Shown here piece after piece: positions 2,474 to 31,400 of a stretch of 64,000 nt of DNA (position 1 is its first letter; each line of letters begins with the position of its first letter). A program made the translations under genes and the position numbers. The stretch is from Asterias rubens (lineage: Eukaryota), in NCBI RefSeq assembly GCF_902459465.1, contig NW_022985714.1:1-64000 (forward strand). The letters run 5' to 3'. The notes under the pieces were generated by a model, which saw only the letters and a list, made by a program, of their open reading frames with translations, did no database searches and was not told the origin of the DNA.

Positions 2474-5400
2474 ATGCCGAGATCCAAGGTTTTACAGTTT
2501 CTGTCTGCAGTATCCAGATCGAAGTTTTCAGTGCCTGGTGTTTTATTTCATGCACGTTGTGGATCGTTGATATTGTTTCAAAAAGTTTCGGAAAGCAGTT
2601 CTGTTTTTAATTGTTGTCTCGGCACCCAGCATTCATCATTACTGCATTGTTCTTCATCCAAACAAAATGTACTCGATGAAAGTTTTCGCAACCGCAGAGA
2701 CAAACATGCCGTAAAATTGACTCCGTTTCCCACTCCACGGTTTCCCAGAGCAACATCTCCGGCCAGTATCTTGGTTTCATTTCCCTACTTCACATGTGCC
2801 CGTCTGAGGGATAAAGATTCTTCAGCAGAGCCTACCCCTTACCTGGATGGACCGACCTTATTAGAATGTAGTACTCCACAAGCTGCTGTCAAGTGGTGGA
2901 ATGATTCATTTTTAAAATGGGGTGTTCCAGATCCTGAGGTGTCAGCAGAGTTTATTGTGGCACACGTTCTGGGATTCAAACAGGTGACAAAAAAGTTTTT
3001 GATTAGTTTGAATGATTTGCATGATTTAACTTTCCTGGGTAAAACTTATCAAAATAGAATATACGAATTAGTGATGAAAAAATAAACTTATTTAACAACT
3101 TCTAAAATTAAACTTTCTTATTAGTTATTCTAATTATAAGTAGGCCTAATTTAAGAATGAGATTAGAAAAGTTGTTTCTTCTGAAATTGTCATAAAAAAT
3201 AAACTACTTTTGCTTTTTATTCATTTGACAAAGTAGTTTTTCTTTTGGATGGATATTTATTTCAAAGCAAAGTAAATATTCTGTTAAAACATGAACCATT
3301 TAATTAAAATAAAAAAACAGAAACACTTAAAACTTAAAAAGCAATTATTTAAAGTTTAATTGTTTTTTTGTTTACTTGTTGAAAGATGGTGTGAGATTAA
3401 AAAATTACAGCAATAAATGGCCATCCCCGCCCCTTTTTCCACTTATAAAGTCCGACTAACTTTGAAGAATTTTAGTCTTGAATGAGAAATGTGTTTACTC
3501 AGAGGTCAGTTCATCATTTATTATCTTACTTGTGGTTTTGTGCGAGATGTACTTTTAACTCTTGTCTCCATGTTTATCTTCAGTTCCATGAGATGTTATG
3601 TCAAAGGTCACAGGGGTTGTTGACTGGGAACGAGCTCGACCAGATCAACAAGTTATGTAACAAGCGAAAGGAGAGGTAAGAACCGGTTACACAACCACAC
3701 GAGGGAGCTGTTGCATTATTATAGGCAAATGCGAACAGTTAACTGTTCCGAGATGTTTGGTTTGCAGTAACATCTTCTACTTGTTGGCCAGTAGATTATG
3801 TTCTTTTGAGATCTTGTCTTGCTTTATATTCTACAACCGCGAAGTAGATATACAGAATTTGGGAAACTTCCCGAGACATTATGAGTACTTTTGGAGCTAA
3901 GTTAAATTTATAAATATTGGGCGAGTACAATAGAGCAGAATATTATCTGGTGAATTCTGGACTGTTCCATTTGCAGAGATGAATTCTGGAATGTTCCATT
4001 TTCAGGAGGTAAAATCTGTACTGTTCCATTTCAAAAAGCAATGTTAATTGTCCTTCAAAATCTATTTCTTATATATTTATCAATTATTGTCAATTCTCAC
4101 TTGTCCCAATAGATTGATTCCAATAAATACAGATTTATTAATTTTCAAATATGTTGGCAGGGTACCAGTCCAGTATATTGTTGGCGATTGGGATTTCCGA
4201 GACCTTGAGATAGTCGTCAGACAACCTGTTTTCATTCCTAGACCAGAAACTGAGGTAAGGGAGTAGATGGCTGGGCTTCCTAAGCTTTAACGTTCTTGAA
4301 GATTATGAAAGGAACCCAGAAGGATGATGATAAGATGCTAGTCTCCCATTTTAGCCTTTTGTCAAGGCCTTCATAGACCTTATCGCAAATACTCGGTACA
4401 GAAATGGTGCGCTCATGTGATGAGACAGGGAGGCCTACCCAGCGCAGTTATAGATGTTATGCCTGCAGATACAATTTGAAGTAGAGGCCGCCCTTAGCTG
4501 CGCTGGATAGACAATGTGACAAAGTGGAGTGGTAGAAGACTAAAGCGTAGGAGAGCTGAGAAGAGCAGCGATTGATAGTCACCAGGGCCCAACTTCATAG
4601 AGCTTCTAAGCCCCAAAATTTGCTTAGGCTGAAATTTCTTCTTTGATAAAAACAGGATTACCAACCAAATTTTTTATTTGTTGCATATTGCTTGTTACTG
4701 GTATTCAGCTGCTGTTTGCTTATCCTAAAAATCACGTGGAAATTTGGTTAGTGATCCCGTTTTTTATCAAGGCAAAATTTCATGCTAAGCAAATTTTTGT
4801 GCTTACATGTAGCAGCTCTATGAAATTGGGCCCTGGTGATTCCATGGATGGCGGCGACTCAAGGATTGCACCCCAATATAGTTGGAGGATGAGGCAGTCA
4901 TTGACTCAAGTCTTTGCCGAATGATGATGCGCGCAGTAGGCATGGAATGAGGTGCATGCTGGTCTAGCGAGGGATCAACTTTGATCGCAAGCTAGACCAG
5001 CATTCACCTCATTCAACAGTTAGCGCTTGGGCAATGGGTATTTGCGAAAAGGTCTATAGCAAATTGCTTACAGCCTAAAGGACTAAGTAATACATATAAA
5101 AAAAGTTGATGTTGTGACATTGAGTCTTTATTGAAGGCTTTTATTTTTTTGTTTAGCCTTCTAGAAAGACTCGGCTAGGGTTAAAATGCCAGGCCATTAA
5201 CTATTTTTGCACGAAATTTAAACCTGCAAATTACTCACTGAAACAACTCTGCTGAATACTGAATGATCCTTTCTTTTTGCTGCAGATGCTTGTTGATGTT
5301 ATAGTGGGACACTACTCTGTTGATGAGGAACTACATTTTCTTGAGATCGGGAGCGGTAGTGGAGCGATCAGCATCTCCATCCTCAAAGAACTGCCTTGTG

Positions 5401-8400
5401 TAAGGGACATTGAAAAGAGAAAAATCAATTGAATGTCACTTTTCAATCTTAAAAACATAAAGCCTGTAATAAGCACCAGAACCTGCTAAGCCAAGGAAAA
5501 TCTTGCTTAGCAAAACCATGTTGCCAGCTAACATGTCGTAAAGTTTTCATTGTTGTGACTGGTGCCCTACTAACTTTTTGTTTTGCTTAGCAAGCCATTT
5601 GTTAAGCAGTATTTTCTGCTAAACAGCTTTATGAAATTTGGCACTGTTTCCCAAACCCTCCTCTAACAATCCCACAATCTTTATCGTTTAGGCCTAATTT
5701 GTAATCAACAAAAAATAGTTTAAACAAATTTAGTGAAAGAAATATCACCAAAGACCAAGGATTGCCTTTGAAACTAATAACACTCCACACTAATGACATC
5801 ACAATTGCTAAAAAAAGCCCGGATGTCAACATAAGCTTGGACATGTAGGCACCTGTTAATGAATTTGACACATTGCCTGAGATCTGGGAACTGAGCTTCT
5901 ATTATTAGCATTCGTGCAGAGGGATATTGATAAAAACAAATTCTTTTAAACAATATGTCTTATTTATTTGGCAATTTCACATATAAATTCCAAATTACAA
6001 AAAAAATTATACGAATAGGATACAACTCTTAAAAACCATATAATCGGTGTCATTGTTTGAAAACTTCGTTAAGTTGTTTTACCACAATTGTTTCATACAA
6101 AGTTTGAAGTAATGTCATTTTATATTTATAGGCTCGTGTAACTGCAATTGACTGTAATGAGGAAGCTGTGAAACTCACCATAGAGAATGCTATCAGGTAT
6201 ACATGCCAGGATCCTTGATCATGTATTTTGCAAACCATGAGTATACGTGTGCATAAAGCGCTCACCTCTCACCACAGTGGCCCTGGTTCGATTCCTGGCT
6301 AGGGCCATAATGGGAGTAGAGCTGTGTGTTGGTTCTCTCCTATGCCACAGGGTTTTATCTCTGGGCCCTTCGATTTTCCGCCCTTGGGGAAAAATCTAAA
6401 TATGTGGCTGTGCTCCGGGTTCATATAAAGGTTGATGGGGCTGGCTGCCAATGGCACCCTTGCATGCGTGTGACCCGAGCATGTAGCCCCGTTTTTCGTC
6501 CAATTCAGATTATCAGCTGTGTGCCAATAAAGGCGGATGGTATATATCCTTGTGCCAACTTGCACTTCTGGCGGCAAAATGAGGGAACATCGCGCCATTT
6601 TGTATTGGGCTGACAGTGGCGTGACGTGTGTCTGTGTGATTGCATAGTGCACAGTTTTATGACATTTGCCAACCAATCTGTACAATAACGAATCGATGCA
6701 CTTTACATTAGTGCCCTGCAGTCATTATGCCAATAATATTCCTTTAATCTTTTACGGCTCCCTGTGAAGAATACAGCCTGAGCTGCCGTGGCACTCCAAA
6801 ACCTTTTTTATTCACAGTATCAACCTCTACCCTCACAAGTACCCAGTTACACCCCCTGGGTGAAGAGAAGCTATTGTACTATAAGCATATTGCTAAAGGA
6901 CACAAGTGTTATGATCATAATAATAATAATAATAATAATAATAATATCGAAGTCTTATATAGCACACGTATACTACCAAACAAGGTACTCAAGGCGCTGA
7001 GTATATATAAACTTTCAGAAAGATAGGTAATTGCAGTGATGAATTTTGAGATCCAATTATTTAGCACCTTATAAGGGTTTACATGGTGCTATGGCACATA
7101 CAGCAGCCACAGCCAGGAACACTGGGGCGAACCCCTTCTCTTTTCGAAAAGTGCACTGGGTTCTTTTACATGCATTACACAACACATGGGACCAACGGCT
7201 TAACGTCCCATCCGAAGGACGAAGCAATGGTTAAGTGTCTTGCTTAAGGACACAAGTGTCACGGCTGGGGACACTCGGCTGACTTAATCACCAGAACTTG
7301 AATCCGATGCTCTAAAACACTTGGCCATGGCCCCCTAATAAAGCGAAGTCAGGTAACGCTCTCTTCACAATTTTAACAACAAAACTTTGTTCTTTGTGTA
7401 CCAGACTAGGTGTACAGGACAGACTATCAGTCCACTGTGCTACCATGATCTCTGAACTGCCCAATTGCCTCAAAGGGTTCTCTTTTGATGCCATCGTTAG
7501 CAATCCTCCATATATACCAACCCAAGACATGGGCAATCTGGATCCTGAGATAGTTCTGTAAGTTGAGTAGAGGACAAAGTTTGTATTATATAGTTATAGT
7601 TTGACTAACAGATGGGAAACCAACTCCCAAAATGATGCAACCAAGATTCACTTGATAACTCCGAGATGAATCCGGTCCAAAGAAGCAACTTTCATATAAA
7701 TTTTTATTTTAATAACTAGAATAGATTCTAAATAGTGGTTTGTCTTTGGGTGTCCCAAAGCAGATATCATTATTTACTTCAAGACAGCTTATTTAGGTGA
7801 GATATGAAATATAACATCTATTTGAAGGACAAAGAAATACATGTACGTGTCTGGCTTATGGACAAAAGTGCCATGGCCAGGACACGCAACACACTCAGCT
7901 GATCAGAACTTACACCGGAGCTCGAGTCTAGTGCGCTTCACCGCTCGGCCTGGTAAGGATTTACAAGGTGCTGCGGCACAATTAGCAGCCACTGCTAGGA
8001 AACAGCCGGGCAAACCCTTTCTCGTCAAACTAATAAGTGGTACTCGATTCATTTGCGAGCATTAGAAGACCAACAGCTTTACGTCCCATCCAAAGGACAA
8101 AAGTGGCTTGGCCAGGACATGAACCCACACTCTGCTGATCATAAATGCCAGGGCTCAGGTTCAGTGCGCTTCACTGCTCGGCCAAGACACACCAATAATA
8201 GTTTTAAAATGTTCTCTTTAGATATGAAGATGAGCGAGCTCTCTGTGGAGGGTCAGACGGTCTGGATGTAATCAGAGACATTTTGTCTAATGCAAGACAT
8301 CTTATGAAGTCTGGGGGTTTCATTTGGTTTGAGGCAGACACCAGACATCCAGAAGGAATCCAAGAATGGCTGAGGAATAACCGAGATACCTGCGTTGAGT

Positions 8401-8899
8401 TTGTCAGAACATTCCAAGATTATAATGACCGGTGAGTATGTATGCAGTCTAACAGAATCAATAAAGGAATGACACTAGACTTGGCACTTCATGGAGGCAA
8501 CAAAGGTGAATGGTCATTGCCTTGGTGCCTTTAAAATGCTCCAGTAGAAATTTACAATTGTCTTCTTAAAGGGGCTTTGTTGTTGTACTCAACGCAGACC
8601 CGTGGTTGCACATTGAACTATGAACTCACCCAGTTACTGCATGCACGCGCACACTCTCCCTAGGGAGGGATGGAGGGCACACACATGCAGTAAATTGGTG
8701 CCAGTTCATCCATGTACAGCTTTAATTGCCGAGGCCTTCATCCTGTAGAAATTTGACAGAGGCCTAATCACATGAAACCTTCCTTGCATATTACATACAT
8801 GAAACCATTTCTAGTATACCAAGTTATGTACAAGTGAATTTTATCAATTCCAGGTCCCGATTCTCTCAACTGAAGTACCAACATCCTACAAACAAGTGA
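2474..8899 (+). CDS. HEMK1: HemK/PrmC-family N5-glutamine methyltransferase (mitochondrial release factor methylase), 8 exons, 427 aa
   Basis: Exons 2474-2983, 3584-3675, 4161-4254, 5286-5399, 6132-6196, 7405-7557, 8222-8431, 8854-8899; all GT-AG, phases consistent, 1284 nt. Motifs VPVQYIVGDWDFR, VFIPRPETE, SAM-binding LEIGSGSG, catalytic IVSNPPY, YEDERALCGGSDGLD. First AATAAA at 9741. Confidence 0.95.
4373..5057. mobile_element. Non-autonomous DNA transposon (TAGACC...GGTCTA ends) with a nested CWG-type MITE at 4586-4832
   Basis: TIRs ATAGACCTTATCGCAAATAC / GTATTTGCGAAAAGGTCTAT; related ends at 22730-22904. Inner element GGCCCAACTTCATAGAGC...GCTCTATGAAATTGGGCC flanked by CAG/CTG. Confidence 0.65.
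6250..6420 (+). mobile_element. tRNA-derived SINE fragment
   Basis: B-box GGTTCGATTCC followed by a non-tRNA body (GTTGGTTCTCTCC...GGGTTTTATCTCTGGG...); no acceptor stem. Confidence 0.5.
6917..7330 (-). mobile_element. tRNA-derived SINE, near full length, with a (TAT)n tail
   Basis: Reverse complement of the 56399-56803 element; (ATA)n at 6917-6946. Further antisense fragments at about 7820-7930, 7940-8185, 46300-46540 and 52930-53190; a sense fragment at about 50510-50640. Confidence 0.7.
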
Positions 8900-8983: not shown

Positions 8984-9340
8984 CAGAGCTTGGCCACGAC
9001 ACCTTGCATGTCAAGACAGGTGTCAAAACTGGGACCCAAACCCCGACATCGTTAGTCAGAAACACCAGAGCTTGGCAACGACACCTTGCATGTCAAGACA
9101 AGTGTCAATACCGGGACTCGAAGCCCGACTCTGCTGGTCAGAAACATCAGAGCTTGGCCACGACACCTTGCATGTCAAGACAGGTATCAAGACCGAGACT
9201 CAAACCCCGACTCCGTTGGTCAGAAACACCAGAGCTTGGCAACGACACCTTGCATGTCAAGACAGGTGTCAAGACCGAGACTCGAACCCTGACTCTGCTG
9301 GTCAGAAACATCAGAGCTTGGCCACGACACCATGCATGTC
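8984..9340. repeat. 82-bp tandem repeat, about 4.3 copies, derived from the SINE head
   Basis: CAGAGCTTGG recurs at 8984, 9066, 9148, 9230 and 9312; the unit resembles the SINE segment GTGTCAAGACTGGGACTC...TCTGCTG.TCAGAAACA. Confidence 0.85.
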
Positions 9341-12300
9341 ATAAGCAAAGCACTCCAGCATGGTAGCTTCCAAATGCTGTATAAATTTGATCTCTGTGAG
9401 AAGCATCTATCAGATATTTTGGAGTACAACAAAACATCACATCCTTATCTGTCAAATGTCCATTCTCTAAACACGAGACAAAATTAAACGATCAAAATAG
9501 TAATATCATCTCTCTATGTCTTCGTTTGGCAGCTGACTATGCAATAGTTTGGTTTTATTATATTTTTCATCAGTCACATAGGAAAAAATGGTGGCATTAT
9601 TTTTAAAAGTAAAATCATTCATACATAACGTCCATAGTAATATATACATACAGTAAAGAGGATAATATCGCATGTGGAACAGGCTAGAAAACTTTGTACA
9701 TAGGTGATGAAATTCATGACGAGTGCTTTGCACATCGGGAAATAAAGACACATTCTAAACAATATCTACAGATTAGGCGACTAGAATTTTAATGAAAGTG
9801 GTGCAATAGTTACGAGAAGTTCAACATGATTGGACTATAAAAAAAATTACTTAAAAAAAATGGATTGTCTTTAATTCATCTCGCTACAGTAATGTTTGAA
9901 ACTCATGTTTACATTAAGGCCTTTGGGAATATTTGATTGTTCTATAAAATAAAATTGATGTTTTAAAGTGTATAATAATTGCAATTCATTTATTATGTTG
10001 TCACTAGGAACGTGTAATAAGCATTTTACCTTTGTATTTGACAGTTAATACTACTTACAGAAACAATGGCTCCCCCAAAAGCTTTTCAAAATGTAGTCCT
10101 CTGTTAGTGTTTTGTTTTTCCTTTTAAAAAACTAATTTCTACACCGGTACCAATTTTAAAGCAACGCCACAGGCCAATTTTATGGGAGTGGAAAACTACT
10201 CCACAAAATCAGTCAACTTTACCAAAATGTGAAGCAGATGGTTTTGACACGAGGCCCCAGAATATTCAAGTCACGAAAACAAATCACCGGGCGGAGGGTC
10301 ATAGCTAGATCTGAAACAAACATTTGATATTTCAGCAGGTACCTTGTAAAGTAGTGCCGGCCAGTCAATTTGTTAGTTACTCCTAATGATTTCATTAAAT
10401 GAGCTTTTAGGAACATTATCCTCAGCGCTAGAAGTGAATTATTTTGATAGCCGAGGCAAATAACTGACATTAATTAAATACATGGAAATTTGCATCGGGG
10501 ATAAAGAATAATTGTGGTTATTACCCATTTACACCGATGTGTGTTAGCACTGTGTAATCGGTACTTTCCCCGAGTTCTGTGAAAAAAAAAAATCACAGGC
10601 ATATTACCTGGATGGGATTCGAACTAACGACCTTTGCAATTCTAGAGCAGTGTCTTACAAACTAAAACACAGAGATTGCCCGTTAGCTAGAGGCAGTTCG
10701 AATCGCAATGATTTAATAGATGGAAATTTGCATCAGGGATAAAGAATAACATAAAAAAAATCTGAATTCAGATAAAGGTCCGATATTTCTCATCCTCAAA
10801 AACAGCCAAACGTAGAAATGTCCTTGTGGAATAATATGGACAGATACACAGACTCGTTAAATAACCAATTAAAAACAGTTGAATAAAAAAATGCATAGCA
10901 GTAGGCACACAAATTAAAACAACAAAAAGTTTACATTTTTCCTTCAGCGTCTTATGGTAACCTTTTGGGTAAAATGATCCAAACACAAGTACGGGTAGCT
11001 GAATAAAAGGCTAATCAAACTTTTTGTCCCATCTTGATTACCTTCTTGAAAATTCCCTTGATAACGATTCTGCAAGTTCTGCTTATATTTTAGCATTTCA
11101 TCAACAACATCCCAAAGTGACAATCGGTCCCCTGCAGCCAAACCTTAATGTTGGGAGAAAACCGTGTTTTGAGAAAAGCTAATTTTGAAATTATTGGTTC
11201 GTAGACTGTTTGCTATTTCATCTTAGAAACTTTACATATTAAGAGCGACAAATAAGTTTGAAATTTTGTTCATAACAGGTTGAATAAGTTAGTAATTATT
11301 TAATTAACAGGATTTTTTTAATATAAAAACTGTGCAAACAAGGTGTTTAAACTTCTTGGCTGTTCGTAAAACACGCAACTGGACCAACAAGCCGCGTATC
11401 CTTTATTTTGGCACTTTGTGAAAACTTCATTCCAGGTTCTTGGTTTTATTTTTTGCCATTCATACAGTATTGTAGGTCAACAGATATGGCTCTTGGTGAA
11501 AATGTTTTTTGGCCGAAGCACTCTGATTTGGCACTGTGCCAGCTGTATAATCACTGCAATCACATGAACATTAAATGACAAAAGGTTTTTGGCACATCGG
11601 GAAATGCAGGCTTTCATCAACTTAGCATACTTAAGAAACTAGATGATTTTGAGACCTTATTGCTAAAAAAAGTCAAAATTTGTTTCCTACTGATTTTTAT
11701 GTTTGTGGCACTTTGTGATGTTGTCGACGATTTTGACTCGGTTAAAGAGACGGATTTGAAAACATTTTTTTCTTGGGTCTTGATTCCATATGTATAAAAT
11801 AAATCCGTCAAATATTCATTTTCGCCTAGTTGATTTAGAGTTCTTAACACAAACAAAGCTTGTAACTCTACATACAAATTAACACCCAAGATGTAATACT
11901 GGCAATCATGACAAACTCCAACTTTCCACAACGTTGCAAATTGGAGTCCGTTCTACCAAGTGCAGTTAATAAGCTACTCGTTTATATATATACTTTTAAA
12001 AAACGTTAAAGAATGCAGCTTAAAAAGAACCTGCAGCAGCTATTTATAATAAAATACAATGTGCACATTTGATGTTCACATTTGATGCCAACCTTTCCAA
12101 GGGGAAACATTTCTGAACATCTCTCCCTCAGAAATGCTACGTTTTAACATGTACTGTACAATATTAACGACTTCAAAAGACCCCCCCATTGACAAAAAGG
12201 TTAGGGTATTCGGCGCCCCTTCACTTTCTTTTCTCCAGGGGCTCCTCGAAAAAACTATTCTTTACATCTTGACGGCTTTATATACAGCAACAGGAAAACA

Positions 12301-13483
12301 AACGAAAAACCCCAGATGAAGTATTTACAATATAAGTTGCCATAACTGGTTCAGCTTAGGTAAGATATAGGCATGGAATTACTTAAAGACCATGGCCTTT
12401 GTTGCTCCCTGCTTTCCCTTAAAAGATATCAGAGTTTAATATTTGTCAATGTTAGTCGTCCTTGCAAAACGAGAATGACCTTGCTCTTACAAAAATTAAA
12501 TTCTAGGCCTGAAGTGGTTATACAACAACAAAAAAGGTGAAATAATGGATTTTGAAAAAAAGTTATACTTTATCCTTTTTATCAATAAAAATATTCTGCT
12601 GGGAATTGCCATCAGAACAATGTGCAAAAGTTTTGTTGTGTGGGGTGAATGGTTGTAAGACGCCAGAATGACTTACTACTTGGCATGACAATCCACTGAA
12701 GATCAAATTCCTACAGGATTCATGTTCCTCCTTGGGGATGCCGAGCAATTTTCTTGGGAATGCTAACACCCTCATACTGTCAGACCATTCATTATCATCA
12801 CTGTGGTTTTGAATGAAAGATAAACTACGCCAGCCTGTGATGCACTTGCCTTCATGTCTCGTCATGTGAGCCAAAGCATGCCTGCCAAAGCAGTACGTTT
12901 TGGCCCATTCAATTGAGTCTGTACTTACAAGAAAGAAGAAGTTTAAAGTGGTGAATGCATCGACACAGAACACACACAGCTATGTGCAGTTGTGTCAACA
13001 TACAGAACCTGTGTAGTTGAATGGTTTCAAAGAAATGGTCGGTCAAAATCAATTTTCTTTTTCTAAGTGTACCTAGAAAAGAGGTTAAGAATGGTGAGCA
13101 TTTTCTATGGTCGAAATTCAAAAGCTAGATAATCTTGAGATGCTCCCTCCTGCTTCAAGCTCTTCCTCAACTTCATCTTGTAACTTTTTTCTTTTTTTCT
13201 AAAGACCTGTTTGCTGGGAAAAGAAACTCAATTGTGAGGAAAGATGAATTCATTTCGATCTTTTTTTTTTGGGGGGGGGAGGTCAAAAATAAAAAGCAGT
13301 AGTTATCCCACGATGAGGTATTTTCAAGAAGTATTTACTCAAAAGTGAAAGAAAATAAATAAAAATCAGATCCATCGCCGCTACCCAAGCCACCTTCATT
13401 GGAATTATAGATCTTGAAGACGTCTCAGTTGCTGTAAAATTGTCCAATGTTTGGTGTAGTTCATGATCAACCCGCTCTGCATT

Positions 13484-16400
13484 CTACTGTCCAGCACTGG
13501 TGGCTATCGTGATCTGCGCGTTATAATCCGTCGTCTCCATCCGTAAGATATACGGAATGATGCTATCAATCTGGACGTTGCCGATGAGACCAGCGAAGAA
13601 CAGCTCCTCCATGATTCCTGGGTTGAGGAGACGCAATGCTGGCAGACGCAGGAGGAGCTTCCCAAAGCGGTCTGGGTCATTGGGGTACGTCTTGGTCTCA
13701 TACGCCCTCAACTCACTCACCGCTTTTTCCTGGAATTTCTCAATTTGCCGAGGGTTGGTGAGCCCAGGGTGATCTGGAAATATATTTGAGTACATGAAGT
13801 TAAGGCAGAGTCAAGTAGAATGGGAAAAAAGCACTCCAAGTAGAGAACTGGAGTTGAATAAGGGAGTAAGAATAGACGACCAGGTTTAAACAGCCGTTTT
13901 AAACCAGCAGGTTCATGGCCGTGCAATACATGATCCTGCAAGGTTTTAAAGGGCCATTAAAGACAAAGCCACCACTTATAAGTTCCCATTCATAAATAAC
14001 TTTCCTTTAAACACATCAAAAATACCTTTGAGATGTTGAGAATAAATCTGACAGTTAAGCCTCAGCTCGCCTCGACTCTTTATTGAAATGCTATCCATGT
14101 TGAGCACAAAGTAGCTCTTAGTGCAAGTTCAGTGCTGGCATGCTCAAGTCTCAAACTATCGGCGATCGCATACAAGTTTGGTAAGTATAAGTTGCCCACT
14201 TCTTTCAATTCCCGTTTCCTCAGGCCATGCTTATAAACACTCCACACTATGTTTATATCGCGATATGAATATATATTTTCATAAATACAATATGCAATAT
14301 TGACTTCCGACAACTGCCAACATTTGCACACAAAGAAAACGTTTGCACAAAAGAAAAACATCTCCCTGGGTATACTCGTCTACAGTGCTGTAATTTTCGA
14401 CATGAAACCTGTTCTAAACTGCTTGAACAAACCACACAAATAACCTCACTATAAGTAAGGGAAATCTTTTGAAGAATTTCTTTTCACCTGGACTGAAGAG
14501 GACTGCAGCCTTGAGGTAAGCAAACTCCGACGAGTCCATCTGTAGCTTGGTCGTTACCGAGACAAACTCTTGCAGCTTCCAAATGTGTTCCATGACAGCC
14601 TTGACCCTGTCTGCTGAGAGCTTGTCTGTGACAAGGAATAAAGCACATTAGAGGTTACAAGACCTGAGGCACAAGCCGCAACCCTTGAACGTTCGTCTTA
14701 ACAGAGTTTACAGTGACCCTCAATAGAAAAAGTAAAGGTTGGGTCATAGATTGGTAAGAACTCCAACAATTAATTACTATAAAAACTTGAATGGGATTTG
14801 AGGCATTGCATGGGGAGGCATCAATGTATATTTGGTTTGCAGACGCCATGTGCGTACCTACTTGATGGGAAGATTATGTTCTTTTGAGAACGTGTCTTTT
14901 CAAAAATTCAGGTGACTTCTCAACTATCGCGGAGTAGATTTGGGGTATTCAGGAGGCTTCTCAGTTCTGCAAAGAACTGTCCTGCTTTTTAGCTACTACC
15001 TGAGCAGAAGGTAGAAAATCGGTCGGGACTACTACTTCCGCTTAGTGGATCGGGGGGGGGGGGGGGGGGGACTTCTGGTAATGAACTTCACTACTGCAGT
15101 GAGTTCTTGCTCAAGTCATCATCATAAGACTGTGAGATATTATGAGCATTATATAAAAACTTACTTGATGAGATCCAATGCAGCTGTTGATAATATAAAC
15201 TGTTTTTAATTTTGAGACTGGAGAATCCCTTCGAAGTAATATAATTTGAAAATGTTTTAACCCCCACACACAGTTGAACCTGAGAACGGATTAATGCACA
15301 GATCTTTCCTCAGATTTTGGAAGTTTGGAGTTCGTTCGCGAATGCTGCAGCCAGAGATGCATGCCATTGGTACCCACTGTCACCTCACTGAACGCAGGAT
15401 GGATTAAATATTGATGAGAAAATATCACAATTTTTGGGGCTGTTTTCTCAGCAAGTAGACACTGTAGTCAGCTAAAGCTATTGACACTTTGACGTTAGTA
15501 AGCATTAAGTTGACAAAAACCAATCTATGACCCAACCATTAAAGAGATCCTGTGTGCCTTAATAATGATTTAGTATATCATTTCATGGCTGGCAGTAGTC
15601 ATCAGCACTTCCTGCTTTGGCTTGAAGGAAAACTCAAGCCAAATTTTGAAACTGGAAGTTCCCTTTACTCCCATTGAACCCTCTTTGCTAACTAACACAC
15701 CCCAACTGTTGAATATAACAGGAACACCCATACTTATACCCAATGATTAGTGTAATTTTAACCTCACTCTCAAGACTTTCAAGATGGATTAGCTTAAATA
15801 TATTTCTTATTAGTCTTACTGTAACCTTCACAGGTCTAGTCTTCATTTCCACACCAAGCAACCTTGGCCCAATTTCATAGAGCTGCTTAAGCACAAAATT
15901 TTGCTTAAGCAGAAAATTCATTGCTTAGTTAAATCAGATAACCGGCCAAGACTCCACTCAATTGTTATGCTAAGTAAACAACAGCTAAATACTAGTCATA
16001 AGCAATGTATATGGCATGAAATTTTGGCCAGTAACATGTGTAAAATAAGCGAGCTATTTTCGTGCTTAAGATTTTTTTTTGCTTAAGCAGCTCTATGAAA
16101 TTGGCCCCTGGGCCCAATTTCACAAAGTCTCTAAGCACAAAAACTTGCTAAGCACAGAAAACTCTTGCTTAGCAAAAATAGATTACCAACCAAAACACTA
16201 TACATTTATCATTGGTGTGATTAGTACCCCACTCATTTCTAGCTTAGCAAAGGAGTTTACCAAGCAGAATTTTCTGCTAAACAGCTTTATGAAATTGGGC
16301 CCGGTTCTTTGTGACAAGTTCACAGTGAATTCTGAGATGGGCTTGAAAGTTTTGGGGAGTAAAATTGTCTCCAAAATAGCTTATCACAAAAGTGTGTGTG

Positions 16401-28400: not shown

Positions 28401-31400
28401 ACATTACTCTGCCCCCCCCCCTTAAAAAAAAAACAGGAAAAAATACGCTGCTCTTTAAAATGCAGCGTCACAATTCTGTTTTACAGACAGTGTGTAACAA
28501 CTCAGACATTTTACAAAATGTCTTTACCATGTTTGTTTTTGAAGTGATAACTCTGAAGTTGGAGAGTTGCAGGAATTATGCACATTTCTAAAAAGCTTAA
28601 AATTACAATTATCAGGAAGTAAGTGCCTTGCTGAACAATCCAAAGCATCAAAGCATATCGCTGCTTTACAATGTGTCACATTCGGCATGATAAACAAACA
28701 ATTACCTGCTGAACGTCCTGAACTTCATGTATTTGATTAGGCTGGGAGACCTGTCCAAATAATCAAAACACAAACACTTTAGCGGACGTATCATTCTGTT
28801 AAATATATTGGATGAAAGGTCAAACTGTACAGGGATGTGATAGGCTGTTGAAAAAAACCTGAACTTTGAGCCAAAAGCATGTGAGTGAAAAGCGTGAAAG
28901 CTTGGGAGTGTAAATGCGAAGCCTGCTTACATACATTTATATTTGGCTTTGAAAGCGCTGCTCTGCAATCTGGGGTATTCTATATGGGTTTATCTTCATT
29001 TTTTTATAAATTTGTTTTTAATTTTTTTTTATGGGCGTGACACACGACCTTGCACCTGTTCTTATAAGACAGTTTCTTCATTCCTATTGGTCGAGAGCAG
29101 CTGCTGAAACAGTTGTGCCACATCACGCAATACGCGCGACGCGCACAGCATTCCCTTAAAGGAGTTGTTTACCCGAGGGCGGCGAAGGGCTTTACCATTT
29201 CATAGCTGGAGGAGTGTTGTGTTGAAAGAAATCATTTAACAATTATAGTTTTTGCATTTATTTTACTTTTTGAACAAAAAATGATGATGTTTTTGACCGA
29301 AAAGGTATTTATGAATGGGAATCAAAGTGTGTTGAATCGGTTTTCAACTAGTGATTTAAAGGAACACGTTGCCTTGGATCGGACGAGTTGATCTATAAAA
29401 AAAGAGTTTGTAACCGTTTGTTATAAAATGCATATGGTTGGAAAGATGTTTTAAAAGTAGAATACAATGATCCACACAAGTTTGCCTCGAAATTGCGTGG
29501 TTTTCCTTTTACTGTGCGAACTAACACGGTCGGCCATTTATGGGAGTAAAAAATTTGACTCCCATAAATGGCCGACTGTGTTAGTCGACGAGGTAAAAGG
29601 AAAACCGTGCAATTTCGAGGCATGTTTGTGTGGATCATTGTATTCTACTTTTACAGCATATTTCTACCCATATGCATTTTATAACAAACGCTTCTCAAAG
29701 ACCAACTCGACCGATCCAAGGCAACGTGTTCCTTTAAACCTGCCGAGGCCTGGTTCTTTATAATTTATCAAGAACCAGGCCTCGTTGGGATTAAACCACT
29801 AGTTGAAAACCTCTTCAACACACATTGATTCCCTTAGTAAAGATGGCCTTTTTACCAATTCCAATCTATGTATGAAACGTCACTAAACAATTGTGAGCTT
29901 GATCTCCATTTTATAGCCATACATTAAAATTAGTAAAAATGAACATCTTTGCTGAAGCAATACAATACTGTCTAAACCAATATTGAATGTTAGTCCTACC
30001 TGTTCATTTGTTATTTGCTCAATAACATGATGCACCTCTTGCCCGCTGCTCTGTGGGACCTGCACAGGGAATGAAACAAATTGTCATAGGGCCTAATTTC
30101 ATAGTGCTGCTAAATGGTAAGCAAATTTTTGTGCTTACTGTAGCAGAACAATTTGCTAAGGTGCAAGCATATTTCGCAGGTTAGCAGAAAAACTGGGCGG
30201 ACATATTGTGCGTTTACCATGGATTTGCACTGTGACAGCTTTTATTTTCGTGCGGTAAGCACCAGAAGGTTAGCATGCCTTTTCGTGTGCTTACAGTTAG
30301 CAGCGCTATGAACATGAAATGGAAATCGCAGTTAGCACAAAATCAGCCGCTAAGCAGCTCTATGAAATTGGGCCCTGGTCGGCTACAGAGACCCTAATTA
30401 AGTTCCTATATTACTTCAATGACACCAAATGTAACCAGTCACAACTGTTAAACCAAGTTCACTTGATATGAAGATAATGTGAACGTAGAGTGTAGGGTAG
30501 CTATTTGCCAGTATGCAATAAACTCAGGAAGTCATCGTTAGAATTGCAGTCACCTGCTTCAGACCTCATTCAAAGGGAACTTCAATCAGAGCACACGCCA
30601 AATTACATACAACTGCTTCATCAAAAATAGTAAGCACAATAAAATTATGCTTACCAGAATAAGGTTACCAGGCCAGTATGCTCCGTTTCTGAAAGGGCAA
30701 GGGCTACAAGGCATTTTCTCGGTAAGGGGCACCCTATGAGGAAATTTCAAACTTATACTTGAGAATTTTAAGGGCACCAAGGCAATGACCAGGGCATGGA
30801 GGCAACTGCCTTTGATGCCTCTGTAAAGTGTCAAGCCTGGGTGACTGGCCAAGTACCATGTTAAACAAACCATCTGTGAGTGGTATTCTGCTAAGCAGAA
30901 AGTTGGTGCGATATTTTTAACTTGAGGCAAAAGTTGTGCCCTAATTTCAAGGGGATCATTTTCAAGTGGCACCAAGGCAACACTAGGGCAACAAACAGAC
31001 ACCATGGCCTCGCCATCCACTCACTCACCTGTTCCATATACATCACCTCCTGTAGTTGATTCTCTTGGGGGATCTTGAATAGGAAACACACACAGACAAT
31101 TACACAATACACATTATTAATATGGTCTTTCTTCACATAAAGATTCTCCAATAAGCCATTTGCGTGTTAGATTTGAAAAATATCTGGTACAATAACTTGC
31201 TTGGTCACAAGTTACCACTTAAGCTTGAATTCATCAGGTAGTCAAGACAGTTGCTTTGTCACATGATTAGGGCAAGCTTTTGCATAGTTACGTGAGAGAT
31301 GGTGAACTCCCATACATATTTTGAATGGATGTGTATGGCACAATGGAACCAGGGTCTGCTCATCTGTAGGTTGCTGTGTGTGGGTAACAACATTCTTTAC

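What the first reader, a model, noticed from the sequence alone, without database searches (positions are those of the whole stretch)
11407..11711. Three miR-96-type 8mer sites within 190 nt of the NR2C 3'UTR, next to alternative poly(A) signals
Seen: on the mRNA strand GTGCCAAA occurs at 11407-11414, 11527-11534 and 11588-11595, plus a GTGCCA 6mer at 11706-11711. The first canonical AATAAA after the stop is at 11445-11450 and the next at 11402-11407, so poly(A) choice would include two or three sites. Known: GTGCCAAA is the 8mer match to the miR-96 seed (UUGGCAC), and the miR-96/182/183 sensory-neuron family exists in echinoderms. My rough estimate is about 0.04 chance copies per 3.5 kb at this composition. 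Inference: cooperative silencing of TR2/4 in sensory cells; I know of no report of this link.
Basis: partly seen in the sequence, partly recalled or inferred. Interest (0 to 1): 0.7.

Follow-up and report, generated by a model that had tools for sequence, protein, structure and literature searches.

The report
Transposon-derived miR-96 seed matches in NR2C UTR
The three miR-96-type sites are real and sit in the transcribed 3'UTR of the starfish NR2C (TR2/4) gene, but they are leftovers of one old transposon copy found only in Asterias and show no sign of being preserved by selection, so the finding is mostly ordinary.

Summary
Observation confirmed. GTGCCAAA occurs on the minus strand at 11407-11414, 11527-11534 and 11588-11595, with GTGCCA at 11706-11711. 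The first two AATAAA after the NR2C stop (13486-13484) are at 11450-11445 and 11407-11402. Spliced RNA contigs from two Asterias species run from the coding exons through all the sites to at least 10760. The genome encodes a miR-96 hairpin (UUUGGCAC...) beside a miR-183-like one.

The clustering is not evidence of selection. All three 8mers, the 6mer and both poly(A) signals lie inside one diverged, complete copy (about 11733-11095, both terminal inverted repeats present) of a roughly 750-nt MITE-like family. That family carries 6-7 internal copies of the motif TTTCACGAAGNGCCAAAA. Its consensus already holds GTGCCAAT and GTGCCAAA, and 14 of 17 young copies have both.

The element is present in A. 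amurensis, where site 2 is destroyed by two substitutions. Two of three sites kept matches the 61-69% background for any 8mer. Acanthaster and Patiria lack the element and have no GTGCCA within 3 kb of the stop. Diadema has one 7mer and Antedon none.

The site spacing (61 and 120 nt) is outside the usual cooperative range. Incidental, lineage-specific miR-96 repression remains possible but untested.

The parts
13484..13773 (-). Last coding exon of the NR2C (TR2/4; 'orphan steroid hormone receptor 2-like') gene, with stop codon TAG at 13486-13484.
   Evidence: ORF and translation. 95/95 identity to residues 585-679 of P0280, named for Asterias rubens. Splice joint 13773/14488 in RNA contigs of four runs.
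10760..13483 (-). Minimum extent of the NR2C 3'UTR shown by RNA contigs that are continuous with the spliced coding exons. The true 3' end was not determined.
   Evidence: X1 record 7 covers 10760-13773 joined to 14488-14627. X2 record 13 covers 10674-13226. Organism B contigs cover 10719-11749 and 11771-13773. All contigs break at a high-copy repeat at 10458-10845.
11095..11733 (-). Complete but diverged copy of a MITE-like element of about 750 nt that carries terminal inverted repeats. It contains every feature of the finding.
   Evidence: Local alignment to the family consensus: 76% identity over aligned columns, covering both ends. Family copies elsewhere in the genome. The terminal repeats pair in the predicted fold.
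11704..11733 (-). 5' terminal inverted repeat of the element. It holds the GTGCCA offset 6mer at 11706-11711.
   Evidence: Aligns to consensus ATATCGTCACCAATTTCACGAAGGGCCAAAA. Terminal-repeat variants with GAAGTGCC exist elsewhere in the genome.
11588..11595 (-). Site 1: GTGCCAAA in internal sub-repeat 2. The family consensus here is GAGCCAAA, one mismatch away. Kept in A. amurensis.
11527..11534 (-). Site 2: GTGCCAAA, homologous to the consensus GTGCCAAT inside the palindrome CTGGCACAGTGCCAA. Destroyed in A. amurensis, which reads ATGGCAAA.
11407..11414 (-). Site 3: GTGCCAAA, overlapping the second AATAAA by one base. It corresponds to consensus GAAGTGC...GGTGCCAAAAG after an apparent deletion of about 57 nt between two GTGC. 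Kept in A. amurensis.
   Evidence: The deletion reading is my inference from the alignment.
11445..11450 (-). First canonical AATAAA after the stop. It lies inside the element and aligns to consensus AAAAAATAAGC.
   Evidence: RNA contigs read through it.
11402..11407 (-). Second AATAAA, also inside the element.
   Evidence: RNA contigs read through it.
11095..11124 (-). 3' terminal inverted repeat of the element (GTCACTTTGGGATGTTGTTGATGAAAT).

Best explanation
The three GTGCCAAA 8mers, the GTGCCA 6mer and both AATAAA signals all belong to one old copy of a MITE-like, non-autonomous DNA transposon with terminal inverted repeats. It inserted into the NR2C 3'UTR in the lineage leading to Asterias, before A. 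rubens and A. amurensis split.

The element family is built from 6-7 direct sub-repeats of its own terminal-repeat motif (TTTCACGAAGNGCCAAAA) plus two TTGGC(N5)GCCAA-like palindromes. Its sequence is therefore full of exact or one-mismatch miR-96 seed matches. Two of the three UTR sites descend from seed matches in the family consensus, and the third differs from the consensus by one base. The cluster is explained by this ancestry, not by selection for miR-96 control.

The sites are exposed in the mature mRNA and the genome encodes miR-96. They could therefore give incidental, additive (not cooperative) repression wherever miR-96 and NR2C are co-expressed. Nothing indicates that such repression has been selected.

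Shown: site positions, transcription through the sites, transposon origin, lineage restriction, and neutral-looking conservation. Inferred: absence of a selected function, and the possibility of modest incidental repression.
For: Family and structure:
- The stretch 11780-11350 matches 12 or more other genomic places.
- The family has at least 17 full-length copies of about 750 nt with sharp ends and terminal repeats of about 30 nt.
- The terminal-repeat pattern occurs 71 times in the genome against 0 for the control pattern.
- The UTR copy aligns end to end with the consensus, both terminal repeats included, at 76% identity. The terminal repeats pair in the fold.

Seed matches come with the family:
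- The consensus holds GTGCCAAT and GTGCCAAA, and 14 of 17 young copies have both.
- The sub-repeat motif is listed. Variants with GAAGTGCC occur elsewhere.

The sites are in the mRNA and the miRNA exists:
- Spliced RNA contigs of four runs from two species include the sites.
- A miR-96 hairpin is present, with folding energy -43.1 kcal/mol and z-score -4.6, and a miR-183/263-like hairpin lies 850 nt upstream.

No conservation signal:
- A. amurensis has the element at about 92% identity, with site 2 hit twice.
- 2 of 3 sites are conserved, against a 61-69% background for all 8mers.
- Acanthaster and Patiria have no homologue of the element and no GTGCCA within 3 kb of the stop. Diadema has one 7mer and Antedon none.
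- Other UTR islands, at about 12300-12150, are conserved across the three starfish genera, so constraint is detectable when it exists.
Against: - Among 28 family copies examined, none but the UTR copy has three 8mers (distribution: 0 in 11 copies, 1 in 16, 2 in 1). The seven similarly diverged copies (67-80% identity to consensus) have none. The UTR copy is therefore at the top of the distribution. This could reflect retention or gain under selection, a different source subfamily, or the post hoc choice of this locus.
- Two sites have survived roughly 28 My (divergence date from PMC11090083).
- Non-conserved 8mers can still be biochemically active.
- No forcipulatid genome of intermediate distance could be examined, so the power of the conservation test within the lineage is low.
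Confidence: 0.8

Rival explanations
1. Lineage-specific exaptation. The transposon delivered seed matches that were then kept, and one was gained by a single-base change, because miR-96 repression of NR2C became useful in Asterias, for example in sensory or neural cells.
For: There are three perfect 8mers plus an offset 6mer in a copy that is only 76% identical to the consensus, while similarly old copies have none. Sites 1 and 3 are identical in A. amurensis. The sites lie in the transcribed UTR and miR-96 is encoded. Site 3 would lie close to a potential poly(A) end.
Against: Site 2 took two substitutions within 8 nt in A. amurensis, and conservation equals the neutral background. Family variants with GTGCC in the same motif exist, so a source subfamily can explain the T at the variable position. 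Both terminal repeats of this copy carry AAAGTG, including the one read in antisense, which points to ancestry rather than selection on the mRNA strand. There are no expression data.
Confidence: 0.12
2. One reading: an evolutionarily selected, cooperative three-site miR-96 module in the NR2C 3'UTR, coupled to alternative polyadenylation and shared among asteroids or echinoids.
For: Site positions and AATAAA positions are as described. miR-96 is present.
Against: The sites come from a transposon. They are absent in Acanthaster, Patiria, Diadema (one 7mer only) and Antedon. The spacings of 61 and 120 nt are outside the cooperative range. Contigs read through both poly(A) signals.
Confidence: 0.02
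3. The recurring motif serves the transposon at the DNA level. The TTTCACGAAGNGCCAAAA sub-repeats would be subterminal transposase-binding repeats, and the TTGGC(N5)GCCAA palindromes would be protein-binding sites. The miR-96 match is then a coincidence of that motif. This explains why the motif recurs and is compatible with the best explanation.
For: The motif is part of the terminal inverted repeat and is repeated 6-7 times inside every copy. Both seed matches in the consensus are the right halves of near-perfect palindromes, CTGGCACAGTGCCAA and TTGGCAAGGTGCCAA. Young copies are about 99% identical to the consensus, which implies recent mobility.
Against: No autonomous partner or transposase was identified, and the target-site duplication was not resolved. 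The resemblance to the NFI consensus is recalled from memory and was not tested.
Confidence: 0.35

Closest known systems
Transposon-derived microRNA seed matches in animal 3'UTRs (for example Alu- or MITE-borne sites; Made1/miR-548-type relations)
   Same: Seed matches arrive in a 3'UTR as part of a repeat copy. They are multiple per insertion, lineage-specific and mostly unconserved.
   Different: Here the miRNA (miR-96) is an ancient bilaterian one unrelated to the element, so the match is coincidental. It is not a case of miRNA and target sharing a transposon origin. No functional data exist.
Canonical conserved miR-96/182/183 target sites (8mer GUGCCAAA)
   Same: Perfect 8mer complementarity to nucleotides 1-8 of the genome's own miR-96. 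The location is in a transcribed 3'UTR.
   Different: No preferential conservation. The spacing is outside the cooperative window. No known NR2C link emerged: a literature search for miR-96 with NR2C2 gave 17 papers holding both terms, the listed ones with NR2C2 named only 1-6 times and in no title; none were read.
MITEs (miniature inverted-repeat transposable elements) with subterminal repeats
   Same: About 750 nt, terminal inverted repeats of about 30 nt, no coding capacity for a transposase, dozens of dispersed copies with sharp ends, some nearly identical.
   Different: The superfamily is not assigned, because the target-site duplication and the autonomous partner were not identified.

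Membership tests
Selected (conserved) animal miRNA target site cluster for miR-96 | 7-8 nt seed match on the mRNA strand within the 3'UTR | tested here: met
   Three GTGCCAAA at 1889, 1950 and 2070 nt after the stop.
Selected (conserved) animal miRNA target site cluster for miR-96 | Cognate miRNA encoded in the same genome | tested here: met
   Hairpin at G000:C2:10713437-10713458 with 5' arm TTTGGCACTAGCACATTTTGCT. Rfam mir-96 scores 31 bits, below the gathering score of 65. Folding z-score is -4.6.
Selected (conserved) animal miRNA target site cluster for miR-96 | Sites present in the mature transcript | tested here: met
   Contigs spliced at 13773/14488 run through to 10760. Poly(A) site usage is not resolved.
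Selected (conserved) animal miRNA target site cluster for miR-96 | Conservation above that of surrounding UTR sequence in related species | tested here: not met
   2 of 3 kept in A. amurensis against a 61-69% background. Absent in Acanthaster, Patiria and Antedon; one 7mer in Diadema.
Selected (conserved) animal miRNA target site cluster for miR-96 | Cooperative spacing of neighbouring sites (about 8-40 nt; from memory of published work) | tested here: not met
   Start-to-start spacings are 61 and 120 nt.
Selected (conserved) animal miRNA target site cluster for miR-96 | Seed-dependent repression and co-expression of miRNA and target | not testable with these tools
   Needs reporter assays, small-RNA data and in situ data.
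MITE-like non-autonomous DNA transposon with terminal inverted repeats | Terminal inverted repeats | tested here: met
   The consensus ends are reverse complements of each other. The UTR copy has both ends, and they pair in the fold.
MITE-like non-autonomous DNA transposon with terminal inverted repeats | Many dispersed copies with the same sharp boundaries | tested here: met
   At least 17 full-length copies on many contigs. 71 terminal-repeat matches against 0 for the control.
MITE-like non-autonomous DNA transposon with terminal inverted repeats | Small size without transposase coding capacity | tested here: met
   Elements are 713-750 nt long. Only short chance ORFs occur in the UTR copy.
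MITE-like non-autonomous DNA transposon with terminal inverted repeats | Target-site duplication of fixed length | tested here: inconclusive
   Flanks of 16 copies were inspected and no clear duplication was resolved.
MITE-like non-autonomous DNA transposon with terminal inverted repeats | Related autonomous element encoding the transposase | not tested
   Not searched for.
NR2C (TR2/TR4) nuclear receptor gene | zf-C4 DNA-binding domain plus ligand-binding domain, and orthology to NR2C1/2 | tested here: met
   DNA-binding-domain and ligand-binding-domain exons. Best hits are NR2C2 and 'orphan steroid hormone receptor 2' proteins carrying PF00105 and PF00104.

The most novel reading that the evidence does not exclude
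A MITE insertion rewired NR2C (TR2/4) in the Asterias lineage by delivering ready-made miR-96 sites. These sites are now used to lower the receptor in miR-96-expressing sensory cells. More broadly, this MITE family, whose consensus carries miR-96 seed matches, could have spread miR-96 responsiveness to many genes.
Probability: 0.1. Interest if true: 0.45.

Novelty: new member of a known kind. Interest (0 to 1): 0.15.

Why it matters
The result shows that a striking cluster of perfect miRNA seed matches can be fully explained by the internal repeat structure of a transposon copy. The apparent miR-96/NR2C regulatory link in starfish should therefore not be taken as a selected or conserved circuit. 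It also locates where real constraint lies in this UTR: islands at about 12300-12150 are shared by three starfish genera. Finally, it documents a recently active MITE-like family in Asterias rubens that carries miR-96 seed matches. If the sites do act, this would be a modest example of transposon-driven, lineage-specific miRNA targeting.

Tried and rejected
- Tandem-repeat origin. The 61/120/116 nt spacings suggested a period of about 60 nt. TRF found nothing at the sites, and aligning 60-nt units showed similarity only in a core of about 20 nt. This was replaced by the transposon sub-repeat explanation.
- Site state in organism B from read laying. This was resolved through the A. amurensis genome locus instead.
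- Orthologous loci for Lytechinus pictus, Apostichopus and Amphiura. The protein isoforms tried were not on record.
- Starfish of intermediate distance (other Forcipulatida). None appeared in the protein collection.
- Target-site duplication of the element. Not resolved.
- Rfam scan of 10600-13500. No RNA family found.
- Whole-element fold. It is no more stable than shuffled sequence (z = 0.49), although the terminal repeats pair.
- Literature. No paper found with miR-96 and NR2C2 as its subject; the listed hits name NR2C2 only 1-6 times and were not read. Echinoderm miR-96/183 reports exist.
- Earlier scan notes. None bear on the sites.
- A long 3.5-4 kb UTR ending at 9994 or 9559. Considered unlikely, because a convergent HEMK1-like gene ends at about 8433 and RNA depth at 9291-10506 is higher than over the NR2C UTR. 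Not excluded.

Full report
**1. The observation**

On the minus strand, GTGCCAAA occurs at 11407-11414, 11527-11534 and 11588-11595. GTGCCA occurs at 11706-11711.

The gene is an NR2C (TR2/4) orthologue on the minus strand. The last coding exon is 13484-13773, ending in TAG at 13486-13484. It is 95/95 identical to the C-terminus of a protein that NCBI names 'orphan steroid hormone receptor 2-like [Asterias rubens]'. The genome size of 417.6 Mb does not conflict with that species (no reference size was checked here).

Further ones are at 9994-9989 and 9559-9554.

A first-order Markov model expects 0.065 copies of the 8mer in the 2.1-kb UTR, giving P(>=3) of about 4e-5.

**2. Is it in the transcript, and does the miRNA exist?**

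Logan contigs of four runs were laid on 9100-14900. In all four, a contig joins 14488-14627 to 13773 and skips 714 nt that read GT..AG on the minus strand. This shows the contigs are RNA.
- In organism A, the X1 contig continues without a break to 10760. X2 contigs cover 13277-13773 and 10674-13226.
- In organism B, which is about 4-5% diverged, contigs cover 10719-11749 and 11771-13773.

The sites are therefore part of the NR2C mRNA, and transcripts read through both AATAAA signals. Contigs cannot show 3' ends, so poly(A) choice remains unknown. All contigs break at a very high-copy repeat at 10458-10845.

RNA at 9291-10506 has higher depth than the NR2C UTR. It probably belongs to the convergent HEMK1/PrmC-like gene on the + strand, whose last exon ends near 8433. 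The same tail-to-tail neighbour is present in three other starfish loci.

The genome encodes a miR-96 hairpin at G000:C2:10713437-10713458, with 5' arm TTTGGCACTAGCACATTTTGCT. Its predicted energy is -43.1 kcal/mol and its z-score -4.6. The Rfam mir-96 score is 31 bits, below the gathering score. A miR-183/263-like hairpin lies 850 nt upstream. GTGCCAAA is the exact complement of nucleotides 1-8 of this miR-96.

**3. What the stretch really is**

The spacings of 61, 120 and 116 nt suggested a period. TRF found no tandem array, and 60-nt units share only a core of about 20 nt, TTTCACAAAGTGCCAAAA.

A search of the window's own genome with 11350-11780 gave 12 other matches. Those loci contain the same core motif several times. 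A search with one of them found a family with these properties:
- at least 17 full-length copies of about 750 nt;
- the same sharp ends in every copy;
- a start that is the reverse complement of the end, giving terminal inverted repeats of about 30 nt (ATATCGTCA[C/G]CAATTTCACGAAGGGC).

Many copies are about 99% identical to their consensus, which implies recent activity. The terminal-repeat pattern occurs 71 times in the genome, against 0 for the reversed control. This is a MITE-like non-autonomous DNA transposon. Its target-site duplication and autonomous partner were not identified.

The consensus contains 6-7 direct copies of the terminal-repeat motif TTTCACGAAGNGCCAAAA. It also contains two palindromes, CTGGCACAGTGCCAAT and CTTGGCAAGGTGCCAAAA. 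So the consensus itself holds a 7mer-m8 and an 8mer miR-96 seed match, 146 nt apart. 14 of 17 young copies have both.

A local alignment of the consensus to the UTR shows that window 11733-11095 is a complete copy with both terminal repeats, 76% identical in aligned columns. The features map as follows:
- The 6mer at 11706-11711 lies in the 5' terminal repeat (consensus GGGCCAAAA).
- Site 1 (11595) is sub-repeat 2 (consensus GAGCCAAAAACC, one mismatch).
- Site 2 (11534) is the first palindrome (consensus GTGCC-AAT).
- Site 3 (11414) is consensus GAAGTGC joined to CAAAAG. The simplest reading is a 57-nt deletion between two GTGC, which would make it the homologue of the consensus 8mer. This is my inference.
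- Both AATAAA signals also lie in the element. The first aligns to consensus AAAAAATAAGC.

The T that turns GNGCCA into GTGCCA is seen in both terminal repeats of this copy (AAAGTGCC at the 5' end, AAAGTGAC at the 3' end). The 3' repeat is read in antisense on the mRNA, so the T there cannot reflect selection on the mRNA strand. The same T occurs in other diverged members (L007, L044) and in terminal-repeat variants elsewhere. A source subfamily carrying GTGCC is thus a sufficient explanation.

The terminal repeats pair in the predicted RNA fold, which would partly bury the 6mer.

**4. Conservation**

Protein searches gave orthologues whose genomic loci were then fetched.

A. amurensis diverged from A. 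rubens about 28 Mya according to PMC11090083. It has the element at about 92% identity. Sites 1 and 3, the 6mer and both AATAAA are kept. Site 2 reads ATGGCAAA, with two substitutions inside the 8mer. Since the family consensus has GTGCCAA here, this is a loss in A. amurensis. Across the aligned UTR, 69% of all 8mers are perfectly conserved between the two species (61% inside the element). Two of three is therefore exactly the neutral expectation.

Acanthaster planci and Patiria miniata show no homologue of the element between NR2C and HEMK1. They have no GTGCCA in the first 3 kb after the stop. Diadema setosum has one GTGCCAA at 1234, and Antedon mediterranea has none.

By contrast, islands at A. 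rubens UTR positions about 1186-1344 (window about 12298-12140) are conserved in Acanthaster and Patiria. This shows that constraint in this UTR is detectable and lies elsewhere.

**5. Reading**

The cluster is a by-product of transposon anatomy. It is restricted to the Asterias lineage as far as could be tested, and its conservation looks neutral. The spacings of 61 and 120 nt are longer than the roughly 8-40 nt range in which adjacent sites cooperate (established knowledge, from memory).

One point in favour of something more: among 28 family copies, only the UTR copy has three 8mers, and seven similarly diverged copies have none. This is weakened by the post hoc selection of the locus and by the subfamily evidence above.

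Perfect 8mers in an expressed UTR can repress without being conserved. Incidental miR-96 sensitivity of NR2C mRNA in Asterias is therefore plausible. My estimate is roughly 35-45% for a measurable effect where the two are co-expressed. A selected regulatory link is unlikely, at about 10%.

**6. Comparison and novelty**

Transposon-borne miRNA seed matches in 3'UTRs are a known phenomenon, and this is another instance. It fails the conservation and cooperative-spacing criteria of a selected miR-96 site cluster. It meets the structural criteria of a MITE, except that the target-site duplication and the autonomous partner were not established. Literature searches found no paper that has a miR-96/NR2C link as its subject (the listed hits were not read).

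Interest is low. The main value lies in removing a false lead and in documenting the element family.

Noticed in passing
window 12140-12300 (minus strand): 3'UTR islands conserved between Asterias, Acanthaster and Patiria: TCTGTTGCTGTATATAAAGC...GATGTAAA[G/C]AATAG and TTGTACAGTAC. The first holds UGUAUAUA, which matches the Pumilio-type UGUANAUA motif (recalled from memory). This is where real constraint in the NR2C UTR lies.
   Followed up: partly
MITE family consensus; L012:1502-2256 is a representative copy: Both miR-96 seed matches of the family consensus are the right halves of TTGGC(N5)GCCAA-like palindromes (CTGGCACAGTGCCAAT and CTTGGCAAGGTGCCAAAA). These resemble the NFI-type consensus (from memory). 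They may be protein-binding sites of the element.
   Followed up: no
window 10458-10845: A very high-copy, highly expressed repeat, with summed contig depth of 18,000-85,000 against about 30-140 in the flanks. It breaks all RNA contigs and hides the true NR2C 3' end. ATTAAA on the mRNA strand is at 10717-10712.
   Followed up: no
window 4048-8433 (+ strand): A HEMK1/PrmC-like methyltransferase gene lies convergent to NR2C, with its last exon ending near 8433. The tail-to-tail NR2C/HEMK1 arrangement is kept in A. amurensis, Acanthaster and Patiria. RNA at 9291-10506 may be its 3'UTR.
   Followed up: partly
window 11749-11771; L053 about 29620-29780: A. amurensis and the RNA contigs of organism B carry about 160 extra nucleotides just 5' of the MITE copy, where A. 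rubens has 21 nt. This is either an indel or a second insertion at the element's edge.
   Followed up: no
L001:642-720 and L001:1493-1568 (G000:C2, about 10712578-10713504): A miR-183/263-like hairpin and a miR-96 hairpin lie 850 nt apart on the same strand. This is the conserved miR-183/96 cluster arrangement in this starfish. Both score below the Rfam gathering thresholds.
   Followed up: partly
window 8984-9307: A tandem repeat array with a period of roughly 80-95 nt gives long repetitive ORFs on the + strand. In A. amurensis the homologous array is expanded (multiple offset BLAST hits).
   Followed up: no
G000:C10, C12, C5 and others (query positions 594-757): A second, shorter and more numerous repeat family shares about 160 nt at the 3' end and the terminal repeat (TGTCAGCAATTTCACGAAGGGCC) with the 750-nt MITE family.
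   Followed up: no
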